Source: Scyliorhinus canicula
Taxonomy: Eukaryota
Assembly: GCF_902713615.1 (NCBI RefSeq)
Contig: NC_052168.1
Location: 5,828,001-5,892,000 of the forward strand
Length of the DNA stretch: 64,000 bases
Direction of reading: 5' to 3'
Shown here: in pieces, positions 97 to 63,461 of the stretch
How positions within the stretch are numbered: the first letter of the stretch is position 1
Layout of the letters: every line of letters starts with the position of its first letter
The notes under the pieces: model-generated
Databases searched by the model: none
What the model saw: only the letters and a program-made list of their open reading frames with translations
What the model was told of the DNA's origin: nothing
Translations under genes and position numbers: made by a program

Positions 97-1671
97 AAAC
101 CAGAGCAGGATGAGTGGAGCAATGGTCTGGAGGCAATGCAGAGAGCTCTGCAGATGGAGAAGAATGTGAACCAGAGTCTGCTGGATCTGCACAAACTCTC
201 CTCTGGGAACACTGACCCTCATGTGAGTGGCTTTGCTTTCATTTGCACTATTATCCCTTATCTCTAAACATAAGGTTCCCCACGGTAGGCTATTGCAGAA
301 AATAAGGAAGTATGGGATTGAAGGTGATTTAGCGGTTTGGATCAGTAATTGGCTAGCTGAAAGAAGACAGGGTGGTGGTTGATGGCAAATGTTCATCCTG
401 GAGTTTAGTTACTAGTGGTGTACTGTAAGGATCTGTTTTGGGGCCACTGCTTTGTCATTTTTATAAATGACCTGGAAGAGGGTGTAGAAGGATGGGATGG
501 GTTAGTAAATTTGCAGATGACACTAAGGTCGGTGGAGTTGTGGATAGTGCTGAAGGGTGTTATAGGATACAGAGGGACATGGATGTGCTGGGCTGAGAGG
601 TGGCAGATGGAGTTTAATGTGGAAAAGTGTGAGGTGGTTCACTTTGGAAGGAGTAACAGGAAGACAGTACTGGGCTAATGGCAAGATTCTTGGTAGTGTA
701 GATGAACAGAGATCTCGGCATCCAGGTACGTAAATCCCTGAAAGTTGCCACCCAGGTTAATAGGGCTGTTAAGAAGGCCTATGGTGTGCTAACCTTTATC
801 AGCAGGGGGATTGAGTTTCGGAGGCACAAGGTCATGCTGCAGCTGTACATAACTCTGGTGCGGCCGCACCTGGAGTACTGCGTGCAGTTCTGGTCACCAC
901 ATTATAGGAAGGATGTGGAAGCTTTGGAAAGGGTTCAGAGGAGATTTACAAGGTGTTGCCTGTATGGAGGGAAGGTCTTGCGAGGAAAGGCTCAGGGACT
1001 TGAGGTTGTTTTCGTTAGAGAGGAGAAGGCTGAGAGGTGACTTAATAGACATATAAGATAGTCAGAGGGTTAGATGGGGTGGACAGTGAGAGTCTTTTTC
1101 CTCGGATGGTGATGACCAACACGAGGGGACATAGCTTTAAATTGAGGGGTGGTAGATATAGGAGAGATGTCAGAGGCAGTTTCTTTACTCCGTAGTAGAG
1201 GTGTGGAACGCCCTGCCTGCAACAGTAGTAGACTCGCCAACTTTAAGGGCATTTAAGTGGTCACTGGATAGACATGGATGAAAATGGAATAGTGTAGGTC
1301 AGATGGTTTCACAGGTCGGTGCAACATCGAGGGCCGAAGGGCCCGTACTGCGCTTCTATGTACATCTGACTGAGGTGCCTTGAGCTTTTTCAGGGGACTG
1401 CTGCTGGAGACTGCCCCAGGAATTCTGGATAAAATTGCCTTCATCTGAGGAATCCAGTTAATTCTTGACATTTCCTGCTGGATGTTAATTACTTCTCCCC
1501 TTTTTTTTCTTTCAGCTTTGTGACTTCCTGGAGTCTCACTACTTGGATGAACAAGTGAAGATGATCAAGAAGCTCGGAGATCACATCACCAACCTGAAGA
1601 GACTGGGAGCCCCTGAGAATGGGACGGGAGAGTACCTGTTTGACAAGCTCACCCTGGGGGACATCGACTGA
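97..1671 (+). CDS. Ferritin subunit gene A, partial (exons 1-2 lie upstream of the window)
   Basis: Exon 3 97-222 (KPEQDEW...TDPH, AG/GT borders) and exon 4 1516-1671 (LCDFLESHY...LTLGDID*). AATAAA at 1789-1794. Confidence 0.93.
270..1362 (+). mobile_element. CR1-type LINE, 5'-truncated RT/3' end, in intron 3 of gene A
   Basis: Frameshifted ORF2 pieces ([10 protein letters not shown]; [19 protein letters not shown]; [33 protein letters not shown]) followed by a CR1-like 3' tail. Confidence 0.9.
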
Positions 1672-2259
1672 ACTGACTGGGAAGAAGCTTATGGTGTCTA
1701 GTATCATATTTGTATCACTGAGACCTTTGGACCTGCCAGTTCATGTTGTACAGACAAGACTCCATTGTGGAAATCTATGAACGATATAAATAAATGCTTC
1801 AAAATGGAGTGTCTTTTGGCTCGGTGTTTTAAATAGCTGCATGTTGCAGTTTAATTGTGTCTACTGCATTGTTGACGGTCTAAATTTACCATAGATTCTT
1901 TTGCACCTTTATCCAGTGCCTCCTGACCAATATTTGGTACCAGATCCCCATGCTATGGGGGTTACTGTCAGAGCAGGGGGCTGTTAGTGATGCTTATTAT
2001 TTCCATTTTGCACCAAATGGCAATTCTTTTCAGGGTATTGCTGTTCCAATATTTGGGTTTGCTCTGGATGGATTTGCTTGGGCTTTATGTCACTAAATTA
2101 TTGGTGAAATTTCATGGCTGGGAGCAAGAGATCACATATTTTTTTAAAAAGGAAGCCATTCATTATGATCATAGCTAATCATCTGACTCCATACCCTTAT
2201 CCCACTTTCTTTCCAACACCCCCACAACAAATTTTGATCTCGACATACAATCACCATAT

Positions 2260-2581
2260 AATTTACAGTACAGAAGGAGGCCATTCAGCCCTTCAAGTCT
2301 GCACCGGCTCTTAGAAAGAGCACCCTACCCAGACCCATATCTCCACCCTATCCCCAGTAACCCCACCCAACACTTAGGGCAATTTTGGATACTAAGGGCA
2401 ATTTAGCATAGCCAATCCACCTAACCTGTACATCTTTGGACTGTGGGAGGAAACCGGAGCACCTGGAGGGAAATGCACACACTGGGAGAATGTGCTGACT
2501 CCGCACAGAGTGACCCAAGCCGGAATCGAACCTGGGACCCTGGAGCTGTGAAGCAAATTGTGCTAGCTACTGTGCTGCCCT
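2260..2581 (-). mobile_element. HE1/V-SINE-like tRNA-derived SINE
   Basis: Reverse complement of GGGCAGCAC...GGTTCGATTCC head, V-domain (GGTGCTCCGGTTTCCTCCCACAGTCCAAAGA) and CR1-like tail. Confidence 0.85.
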
Positions 2582-2589
2582 TATGTTTT

Positions 2590-3010
2590 AGCCACAGGCC
2601 AACCATTCTTGGGTCAGAAATTTCTCATCGGTCTTAAATGGTTTGCCCTATATCCTTCTGGACACCCCCACCATCAGGAGCATTTACCCCCCCCCCCCCC
2701 CCAACATCTGAACTAACCAATTATCTCCTTGTACATCAATCCCACCATTCCAGCAATCAGTCTGTGCTTCCATGAGGTCAAGAACATCCTTCCTCCAAAG
2801 AGGAGACTAAAGCTGAACACGAGTGTGGCCTCGCATTCCCTCTATAATTGCAGCAAAACAAGAGGTCTCTGAGCCTCTCGCTATGAAGACCAACATACCA
2901 TTTGCTTTCCTTACCTTCCTGCTCACCTTCAGTGACTGGTGTACAAAGACTCCCAGGTCTCATTGACACATTCCCCTCTCCAAATTTATGGCCATTCAGA
3001 TAATGATCAC
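2590..3010 (-). mobile_element. Degenerate CR1 LINE fragment
   Basis: Minus-strand translation YLNGHKFGEG...ARPHSCS resembles the CR1 ORF2 C-terminus; heavily frameshifted. Confidence 0.55.
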
Positions 3011-62958: not shown

Positions 62959-63144
62959 GTAACATTTCAAAACCGATGTTGTTAAATTTTGTTATGTAAG
63001 GGGATGTAGGTAACTGGGACCGAGGCGAGTGTACAGAGTTAAAAGTCAATCTAGTCAAAATATAATTGAATAGTAGAAAATGTTTGAAGGGTTGAATGAA
63101 CCAATCACGAGTAGCCATCCTTATTTTTCCTGTATTCCACAGAC

Positions 63145-63297
63145 CTGATTTGCTCTGGGTGTCACACCCAACCCCCTCTCATTGATTAATTGGTGCCTGG
63201 ATTCATGGCAGATTCCTGATTGGCTATCAGGGATTGTCAATCATCATTGGTGATGTCATTCCCTGTTTGGATGTAGGATGTCCCAGTTGTATAAATA
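63145..63297 (+). promoter_or_regulatory. Ferritin gene 10 promoter
   Basis: Conserved core; TATAAATA 63290-63297. Confidence 0.82.
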
Positions 63298-63359
63298 CAA
63301 GAGCTTGTGAGGACAGAGGTCATGTTGTTGCTGTTTGCATTGGGCCATTAACCAGTAAG

Positions 63360-63461
63360 ATGGCTTCCCAGGTGCGTCAGAACTACCACAAGGACTGTGA
63401 GGATGCTGTTAACAAGCAGATCAACCTGGAGCTCTATTCCTCCTATGTTTACCTCTCCATG
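63360..63461 (+). CDS. Ferritin gene 10, exon 1 only (continues beyond the window)
   Basis: [34 protein letters not shown] followed by a GTGAGT donor. Confidence 0.93.

What the first reader, a model, noticed from the sequence alone, without database searches (positions are those of the whole stretch)
97..63461. Large tandem array of intron-containing ferritin genes in a shark-like genome (at least 12 loci in 64 kb)
Seen: 9 intact genes, 2 edge-cut genes and 1 truncated copy, all co-oriented, each intact gene with promoter, splice sites and a polyA signal; the array is open at both ends. Known: most vertebrates have only a few cytosolic ferritin genes, though some teleosts and amphibians have small clusters. 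Inference: strong dosage amplification of one ferritin lineage for a bulk, probably tissue-specific role (e.g. oocyte/yolk iron, erythroid, or antimicrobial iron withholding); the role cannot be read from the DNA.
Basis: partly seen in the sequence, partly recalled or inferred. Interest (0 to 1): 0.85.

Follow-up and report, generated by a model that had tools for sequence, protein, structure and literature searches.

The report
Catshark ferritin gene array without IRE
This 64-kb stretch of a catshark chromosome carries twelve same-direction copies of an iron-storage (ferritin) gene, nine intact; it belongs to a very large shark ferritin gene cluster already reported as ovary-expressed, and every copy lacks the RNA switch that normally ties ferritin production to iron levels.

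Summary
There are 12 co-oriented ferritin loci: 9 intact four-exon genes (173-176 aa), 2 genes cut by the window edges, and 1 truncated copy. Each intact gene has a TATA/CCAAT promoter, GT-AG introns and a poly(A) signal.

The array is not an assembly artefact, because introns and 3' UTRs of most copies cannot be aligned with each other.

The expansion is not new. A Greenland shark genome preprint (10.1101/2024.09.09.611499) reports 179 FTH1-like and 155 FTL-like copies in clusters shared with the white shark and expressed in the ovary. This scan also followed up the neighbouring window (s1-200264) and reached the same reading.

Added here:
- No copy has an iron-responsive element (IRE). A skate canonical ferritin used as a positive control scores 42.6 bits.
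- The same IRE-less promoter is present in whale shark and sevengill shark copies.
- All nine proteins keep the ferroxidase and channel residues, and dN/dS is 0.17.
- Exon synonymous divergence stays at about 0.08 whatever the intron divergence, and 40 of 105 site pairs fail the four-gamete test. This points to gene conversion between exons.

The most likely role is iron-independent bulk ferritin supply to oocytes. Expression could not be tested here.

The parts
97..1671 (+). G0: 3' part of a ferritin gene cut by the left edge (exon 3 at 97-222, exon 4 at 1516-1671). Intron 3 is enlarged to 1293 nt.
   Evidence: the inserted sequence was not identified (Pfam negative)
4546..4994 (+). G1: truncated copy with only the 3' half of exon 3 (4546-4620) and exon 4 (4848-4994). 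It has no promoter, no exons 1-2 and no nearby poly(A) signal, so it is a pseudogene fragment.
7872..10269 (+). G2: intact gene, 173 aa (exons 7934-8035, 9171-9317, 9687-9812, 10047-10193). Span includes the TATA box and the ATTAAA signal.
13079..15671 (+). G3: intact gene, 173 aa (exons 13147-13248, 14359-14505, 14875-15000, 15455-15601). Exon 2 to exon 3 is 96.7% identical to G2 across intron 2, which marks a conversion tract.
21818..24143 (+). G4: intact gene, 176 aa (exons 21892-21993, 22883-23029, 23509-23634, 23870-24025).
27106..32179 (+). G5: intact gene, 176 aa (exons 27181-27282, 30543-30689, 31539-31664, 31899-32054). The 3260-nt intron 1 holds a reverse-transcriptase fragment on the minus strand (28591-28998).
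34591..36567 (+). G6: intact gene, 174 aa (exons 34659-34760, 35439-35585, 35924-36049, 36290-36439). Carries R63W (human H numbering).
39091..41103 (+). G7: intact gene, 176 aa (exons 39159-39260, 39928-40074, 40406-40531, 40821-40976). A recent duplicate of G6 (intron distance 0.04-0.08).
43646..45740 (+). G8: intact gene, 176 aa (exons 43713-43814, 44531-44677, 45040-45165, 45467-45622).
49557..52849 (+). G9: intact gene, 174 aa (exons 49625-49726, 51408-51554, 52203-52328, 52587-52736).
57166..60415 (+). G10: intact gene, 173 aa (exons 57234-57335, 59005-59151, 59780-59905, 60169-60315). A recent duplicate of G9 with the most private amino-acid changes (R9C, L-to-H, H-to-Y).
63160..63461 (+). 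G11: promoter and exon 1 (63360-63461) of a gene cut by the right edge.
12990..13146 (+). Example of the conserved core promoter and short leader (G3): three inverted CCAAT boxes (ATTGGTGCC, CTGATTGGCT, CATCATTGG), TGATGTCA, and TATAAATA 68 nt before the ATG. The predicted leader of about 35-45 nt has no IRE. The same layout is found in all 10 copies that have a 5' end.
   Evidence: alignments A1, A2, A4; IRE tests
26345..26575 (+). Conserved non-coding element of about 190 bp that accompanies some units. Copies lie at 4040-4270, 26345-26575, 33642-33872, 37640-37870 and 42200-42430, with a partial copy at 53720-53860. It also lies upstream of whale shark array genes.

Best explanation
The window is an internal segment of the shark-wide multi-copy ferritin-H-like gene cluster. 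Each unit is a self-contained RNA polymerase II gene. It has three inverted CCAAT boxes, a TGATGTCA motif and a TATA box, then a leader of about 35-45 nt, four exons and a short 3' UTR with a poly(A) signal. The leader has no iron-responsive element, so the mRNAs should escape repression by iron regulatory proteins and be translated whatever the iron status. The proteins keep every ferroxidase-centre residue and the three-fold channel carboxylates, so they should form iron-oxidising, iron-storing 24-mer shells. The high copy number gives a high mRNA and protein dose, most likely in the ovary or oocyte, where the homologous cluster is reported to be expressed in another shark. The coding exons are kept nearly identical by purifying selection together with gene conversion confined to exons, while introns and spacers have diverged beyond alignment. 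Shown here: gene structure, IRE absence, residue conservation, cross-species promoter conservation, and the divergence pattern. Inferred: IRP-independent translation, the oocyte role, and conversion as the homogenising mechanism.
For: Structure: 12 loci, 9 intact, each with promoter and poly(A) signals. Family: exons hit Pfam PF00210. A catshark array protein 94-95% identical to window copies matches human ferritin heavy chain in the PDB at E 1e-84. E27, Y34, E61, E62, H65, E107, Q141, D131 and E134 are present in all nine proteins. IRE: Rfam finds none in the window at the gathering score or at E<=10, and my own stem-loop scan finds none on the + strand near any 5' end. As a positive control, the thorny skate canonical ferritin has IRE_I at 42.6 bits, 97 nt before its ATG, and the same scan also finds it. 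Whale shark (L001, L003) and sevengill shark (L004) array genes also lack an IRE and share the TATA and inverted-CCAAT promoter. Selection: mean dN 0.013, mean dS 0.078, ratio 0.17. Homogenisation: recent duplicates have intron distances of 0.03-0.2 and dS of 0.04-0.07, while pairs with unalignable introns have the same dS of 0.04-0.13. Between old paralogues, similarity is confined to the exons plus or minus about 10 nt (96-98.6%) and the promoter (about 80%). G2 and G3 form a mosaic (intron 2 distance 0.01, intron 3 distance 0.76). 40 of 105 informative site pairs fail the four-gamete test. Catshark versus whale shark dS is 0.17-0.21, higher than within species, and paralogues group by shark order in the protein tree. 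Expression and scale: the preprint reports 179 FTH1 and 155 FTL copies in clusters syntenic between Greenland and white sharks, with ovary-specific expression of the largest cluster.
Against: No expression data for the catshark could be reached, and the ovary statement comes from one paragraph of a preprint on another species. The transcription start is predicted from the TATA box and was not measured. An upstream non-coding exon cannot be formally excluded, although no IRE exists anywhere in the 64 kb. Low synonymous divergence could partly reflect selection on synonymous sites, and the neutral rate in sharks was not calibrated here. A few copies carry unusual substitutions (R63W in G6 and G7, R63Q in G9, three private changes in G10) that might impair them.
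Confidence: 0.7

Rival explanations
1. The array is functional but serves a somatic bulk role, such as liver or spleen iron storage, red-cell turnover, or iron withholding in immunity, rather than the oocyte.
For: Nothing in the DNA names a tissue. CCAAT/TATA promoters are generic. A dogfish transcriptome paper lists ferritin among liver-specific products.
Against: The only expression statement for the homologous cluster is ovary-specific. A canonical IRE-type ferritin H paralogue exists on the same catshark chromosome record for housekeeping use (P0092). An IRE was confirmed only in its skate clade-mate.
Confidence: 0.15
2. The array is largely a neutral by-product of unequal crossing-over. 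Only a few copies are expressed, and the rest are silent passengers kept similar by gene conversion alone.
For: Truncated and defective copies exist: G1 here, and whale shark copies with a stop or a frameshift. Mosaic conversion is evident.
Against: All nine copies that lie fully inside the window are intact. dN/dS is 0.17. Every catalytic residue is kept. The promoter is conserved across shark orders. The proteins are 89-94% identical across those orders.
Confidence: 0.1
3. Exon similarity is due to strong selection on synonymous sites (codon or mRNA-level constraint) and not to gene conversion.
For: Between-species dS is also low (0.17-0.21) although introns share no detectable similarity.
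Against: Within-species dS (0.08) is less than half the between-species value. Amino-acid differences are fixed by species across paralogues. The G2/G3 tract extends through an intron. 40 of 105 site pairs fail the four-gamete test.
Confidence: 0.2
4. The copies are an assembly artefact, that is, collapsed or duplicated haplotigs.
For: None found.
Against: Introns, 3' UTRs and spacers differ completely between most copies, and intron lengths range from 234 to 3260 nt. There are no N runs in the window.
Confidence: 0.01

Closest known systems
Shark FTH1/FTL gene expansion reported with the Greenland shark genome (bioRxiv 10.1101/2024.09.09.611499)
   Same: Tandem clusters of full-length ferritin-H-like genes conserved among sharks. 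The catshark window is a piece of such a cluster, and whale shark and sevengill shark loci fetched here carry the same gene type and promoter.
   Different: The preprint gives copy numbers, synteny and ovary expression in one paragraph. It does not mention the IRE, the promoter, or concerted evolution. It calls the duplications ancient and conserved, whereas here the paralogues group by lineage, which calls for homogenisation or turnover.
Canonical vertebrate ferritin heavy chain (FTH1; frog and fish H and M subunits)
   Same: Same four-exon structure with the same intron positions as the skate canonical gene. Same fold family (PF00210). Complete ferroxidase centre. PDB best match is human H chain at E 1e-84, with frog M chain close behind.
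   Different: There is no 5' UTR IRE, whereas the skate control has one. Identity to the canonical catshark paralogue is 72%. The genes are multi-copy. Lys replaces the Arg in the VNRQIN motif.
Snail yolk ferritin (Lymnaea, Biomphalaria)
   Same: A reproduction-linked ferritin whose mRNA lacks the IRE, which is read as regulation independent of iron (PMC10799875).
   Different: Snail yolk ferritin is secreted (it has a signal peptide) and has a 42-aa insertion. The shark proteins start directly at the ferritin N-terminus with no signal peptide or insertion, and they are encoded by many gene copies.
Tandem fthl27 expansion in hadal snailfish (PMC10746142)
   Same: Tandem duplication of a ferritin-heavy-like gene in a fish, interpreted as a dosage gain.
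   Different: That expansion has 14 copies, is expressed in most tissues, is linked to tolerance of reactive oxygen species, and is recent and species-specific. The shark family is order-spanning and much larger.

Membership tests
Ferritin H-type (ferroxidase-active) subunit | Ferritin-like four-helix-bundle domain (Pfam PF00210) | tested here: met
   Exon 2 alone scores 45.3 bits against a cut-off of 24.5. The database hits carry PF00210.
Ferritin H-type (ferroxidase-active) subunit | Ferroxidase-centre residues E27, Y34, E61, E62, H65, E107 and Q141 (human H numbering) | tested here: met
   All are present in all nine intact proteins. Numbering was taken from the alignment to the human H chain.
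Ferritin H-type (ferroxidase-active) subunit | Assembly into a 24-mer shell with iron oxidation and storage | not testable with these tools
   Inferred from the strong full-length match (E 1e-84) of array member P0004 to crystallised H chains and from the kept three-fold channel residues D131 and E134 in the window proteins.
Canonical IRP-regulated vertebrate cytosolic ferritin gene | Iron-responsive element in the 5' UTR | tested here: not met
   There is no IRE_I or IRE_II hit in the window at E<=10 and no motif hit near any 5' end. The skate control scores 42.6 bits against a cut-off of 34.
Canonical IRP-regulated vertebrate cytosolic ferritin gene | Four exons and three introns at conserved positions | tested here: met
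   The exon boundaries are the same as in the skate canonical gene L002.
Shark multi-copy ferritin cluster (Greenland and white shark report) | Dense tandem array of full-length FTH1-like genes | tested here: met
   The window holds 12 loci in 64 kb. Scan notes report further arrays in both adjoining windows (unverified).
Shark multi-copy ferritin cluster (Greenland and white shark report) | Conservation of the gene type across shark orders | tested here: met
   Whale shark loci L001 and L003 and sevengill shark locus L004 hold tandem copies with the same promoter. The proteins are 89-94% identical.
Shark multi-copy ferritin cluster (Greenland and white shark report) | Ovary-specific expression | not testable with these tools
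   Only the literature statement is available. No catshark transcript data could be reached.

The most novel reading that the evidence does not exclude
The shark array encodes a specialised oocyte-type ferritin that is uncoupled from cellular iron sensing in two ways. First, it has lost the IRE, so IRPs do not control its translation. Second, Lys replaces the Arg of the VNRQIN motif; from memory, this Arg is the H-chain residue needed for NCOA4-mediated ferritin turnover. The family would have been kept as dozens to hundreds of near-identical genes since before the crown-shark split by exon-restricted gene conversion. That would make it a protein-coding counterpart of the oocyte-type multi-copy gene sets known for 5S rRNA and histones.
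Probability: 0.3. Interest if true: 0.6.

Novelty: new member of a known kind. Interest (0 to 1): 0.42.

Why it matters
Ferritin is the textbook case of translational control by iron through the IRE/IRP system. A vertebrate lineage that keeps very many catalytically intact cytosolic ferritin genes without that switch, apparently for the ovary, shows a second, dosage-based way of regulating ferritin. It also bears on how the large, yolky, long-lived shark egg is provisioned with iron or protected from it. The sharp contrast between homogenised exons and unalignable introns makes the array a clean natural system for studying exon-restricted gene conversion. The expansion itself is already on record, so the value here is confirmation in the catshark plus these regulatory and evolutionary details.

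Tried and rejected
- Rfam at the gathering score and at E<=10 found no IRE or any other credible RNA family in the window. Three IRE-like stem-loops on the minus strand about 500 nt upstream of G6-G8 (34164, 38665, 43220) are copies of one repeat on the wrong strand and were set aside as chance.
- The CAGTGA just before the ATG in G3, G6 and G7 is not an IRE. It has no pairing stem and is not conserved in the other copies.
- The conserved upstream element of about 190 bp was tested as a coding exon. It shows no 3-base periodicity, has stops in all frames, and has no Pfam hit.
- ORFs of 110 aa or more between the genes gave only one reverse-transcriptase fragment. The sequence inside G0's long intron 3 looked RT-like by eye but has no Pfam hit.
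- DNA for S. canicula, S. torazame and Heterodontus loci could not be fetched because the sample files are too large. Flanking synteny (BEST1 versus BAX/GYS1) and genome-wide copy number in the catshark were therefore not tested.
- The window's spliced proteins have no reference, so whole-protein look-ups by exact sequence (encoding contigs, transcript evidence) were left out. Instead, an open frame around exon 2 was used with the 'region' option.
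Full report
**Observation.**
A six-frame motif scan and tblastn with a protein spliced from one copy find exactly 12 ferritin loci, all on the + strand.
- G0 is the 3' part of a gene cut by the left edge.
- G1 is a truncated copy with half of exon 3 plus exon 4.
- G2-G10 are nine intact genes.
- G11 is the promoter and exon 1 of a gene cut by the right edge.

Each intact gene has four exons, GT..AG at all three introns, a single TGA stop and a product of 173-176 aa. 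The length differences come from small indels just before the stop. Each has TATAAATA 62-75 nt before the ATG, a purine at -3 and G at +4, and AATAAA or ATTAAA 64-122 nt after the stop. Gene starts are 4.5-8.7 kb apart. The window has no N runs.

**The copies are not an artefact.**
Intron lengths range from 234 to 3260 nt. For most pairs, introns and 3' UTRs give forced-alignment distances of about 1, meaning no homology is left. BLASTN between old paralogues detects only three kinds of similarity:
- the exons plus or minus about 10 nt, at 96-98.6% identity
- the roughly 400-bp promoter and exon 1 region, at about 80% identity
- short scattered spacer matches

**What the genes are.**
Exon 2 alone passes the Pfam ferritin threshold. 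The nearest database proteins are shark 'ferritin heavy chain-like' entries. S. canicula P0004 is 94-95% identical to G2 and G3 and 93-94% identical to most other copies. Chiloscyllium, Pristiophorus, Mustelus and Carcharodon entries are about 92% identical. Scan notes call the genome a catshark. P0004 matches the human ferritin heavy chain in the PDB at E 1e-84, with frog M chains close behind. With numbering taken from that alignment, all nine window proteins keep E27, Y34, E61, E62, H65, E107 and Q141, as well as the three-fold channel residues D131 and E134. There is no signal peptide or presequence; the proteins begin at the usual ferritin N-terminus.

**The expansion is already known.**
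A full-text search found the Greenland shark genome preprint (10.1101/2024.09.09.611499). It reports:
- 155 FTL and 179 FTH1 copies
- about 80% of them in three clusters with identical synteny in the great white shark, dated to at least 250 million years
- ovary-specific expression of the largest cluster

Cluster sizes in the protein search fit this scale. Single 90%-identity clusters hold 127-180 member sequences. These clusters may mix species, and the members could not be listed. The scan's own notes say that the windows on both sides also hold arrays. They also say that a follow-up of the preceding stretch (s1-200264) reached the same conclusion, including the missing IRE. I treated these notes as leads and tested the IRE point independently.

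**No iron-responsive element.**
- Rfam finds no IRE_I or IRE_II in the whole window at the gathering score or at E<=10.
- My own scan for a C-bulge, a 5-bp stem and a CAGWGN loop finds nothing on the + strand near any 5' end.
- The conserved TATA box leaves a predicted leader of only about 35-45 nt.
- Positive control: the thorny skate gene for P0064, which falls in the canonical clade, has IRE_I at 42.6 bits (cut-off 34), 97 nt before its ATG. My scan also finds it.
- Whale shark array loci (L001, L003) and a sevengill shark locus (L004) have no IRE.
- These loci share the promoter layout: inverted CCAAT boxes including CTGATTGG, a TGATGTCA-like motif, and the TATA box 70-85 nt before the ATG.

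The IRE-less design is therefore shared by galeomorph and squalomorph sharks and is probably ancestral to the family. I found no paper that states this.

**Relationship to canonical ferritin.**
In a maximum-likelihood tree, the skates, two catshark proteins (P0092, P0104), lampreys and tetrapod H chains form a supported clade (100/99). This clade is distinct from the shark array proteins. P0092 lies on the same 27.7-Mb S. canicula record as array member P0004. Array proteins are 89-94% identical across shark orders but only 72% identical to the canonical catshark paralogue. No ray, skate or chimaera array-type protein appeared among the best 120 hits. This hints at a shark-specific family, but absence from a capped list is weak evidence.

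**Evolution inside the array.**
Mean dN is 0.013 and mean dS is 0.078, a ratio of 0.17. This indicates purifying selection. The main result is that exon dS does not follow non-coding divergence:

| Pair or group | Intron or 3' UTR distance | Exon dS |
|---|---|---|
| G6-G7 | 0.04-0.08 | 0.039 |
| G9-G10 | 0.03-0.08 | 0.069 |
| G6/G7 versus G8 | 0.10-0.20 | 0.07 |
| G6-8 versus G9-10 | intron 3: 0.36-0.42 | 0.075-0.091 |
| Pairs with unalignable introns | about 1 | 0.038-0.134 |

Further evidence points the same way:
- G2 and G3 are 96.7% identical from exon 2 through intron 2 to exon 3 (intron 2 distance 0.01). Their intron 3 (0.76), 3' UTR and intron 1 are diverged. This is a conversion tract.
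- 40 of 105 pairs of informative coding sites fail the four-gamete test.
- Catshark versus whale shark dS is 0.17-0.21, with many amino-acid differences fixed by species across paralogues.
- Paralogues group by order in the tree.

Together these results point to concerted evolution of the exons. Some selection on synonymous sites remains possible as a partial alternative.

**How it most likely works.**
Each unit is an autonomous gene, and its mRNA should be translated independently of iron regulatory proteins. The product is a catalytically complete H-type subunit. Copy number supplies dose. The reported ovary expression and the parallel with IRE-less snail yolk ferritin make bulk supply to the very large shark oocyte the best-supported role. 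Expression in the catshark was not testable here, so this step is inference.

**Surroundings.**
No other recognisable protein-coding gene was found. ORFs of 110 aa or more gave only a reverse-transcriptase fragment inside G5's intron 1. A non-coding element of about 190 bp travels with five units plus a partial sixth copy, and lies upstream of all four whale shark genes checked. Its function is unknown.

**Verdict.**
This is a catshark segment of an already reported shark ferritin expansion. The missing IRE, the promoter conserved across orders and the exon-restricted homogenisation appear undescribed in the searchable literature, but the scan already flagged the IRE point on the neighbouring window.

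Noticed in passing
window 4040-4270, 26345-26575, 33642-33872, 37640-37870, 42200-42430, 53720-53860; L001 4390-4620, 12880-13110; L003 1290-1520, 9230-9460: A non-coding element of about 190 bp lies 0.6-4 kb upstream of some ferritin units in the catshark and of all four whale shark genes checked (72-78% identity between species). It has no reading frame, no 3-base periodicity and no Pfam or Rfam hit. It may be a unit-linked enhancer or an old repeat carried along with the duplication unit. It overlaps the scan note s1-234020.
   Followed up: partly
window 17530-18552: A 41-bp G/T-rich minisatellite (about 25 copies, 91-94% matches) sits in the 6.3-kb spacer between G3 and G4. It coincides with the strongest GC skew in the window.
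   Followed up: no
window 25968-26035: A poly-C tract of about 60 nt lies upstream of G5.
   Followed up: no
residue 19 of all nine window proteins (e.g. window 7988-7990 in G2): Array-type ferritins of all sharks examined have Lys in the motif VNKQIN, where canonical shark, skate, lamprey and frog chains have Arg (VNRQIN). From memory, this Arg of the human H chain is needed for NCOA4 binding (ferritin turnover). This is a lead only and was not tested.
   Followed up: no
L002 11868-14691 (minus strand), thorny skate: Next to the IRE-bearing canonical skate ferritin lies a second, divergently oriented ferritin gene annotated as 217 aa, that is, with an extension. The scan notes mention a presequence-bearing ferritin near the catshark cluster (s1-195932), so the gene pair may mark the ancestral locus from which the array grew.
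   Followed up: no
L003 16959-19265 and 21609-21708, whale shark: The whale shark array contains defective copies: one has a stop inside exon 3, and one has a frameshift in exon 1 and a non-ATG start. This shows birth-and-death turnover alongside homogenisation.
   Followed up: partly
window 28591-28998 (minus strand): A reverse-transcriptase fragment (RVT_1, E 2e-6) lies inside the 3260-nt intron 1 of G5 and explains its length.
   Followed up: partly
window 34164, 38665, 43220 (minus strand): An IRE-like stem-loop motif (C bulge, CAGTGC loop) recurs about 500 nt upstream of G6, G7 and G8 on the opposite strand. It is one repeat copied with the unit and scores below Rfam reporting, so it is probably chance.
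   Followed up: partly
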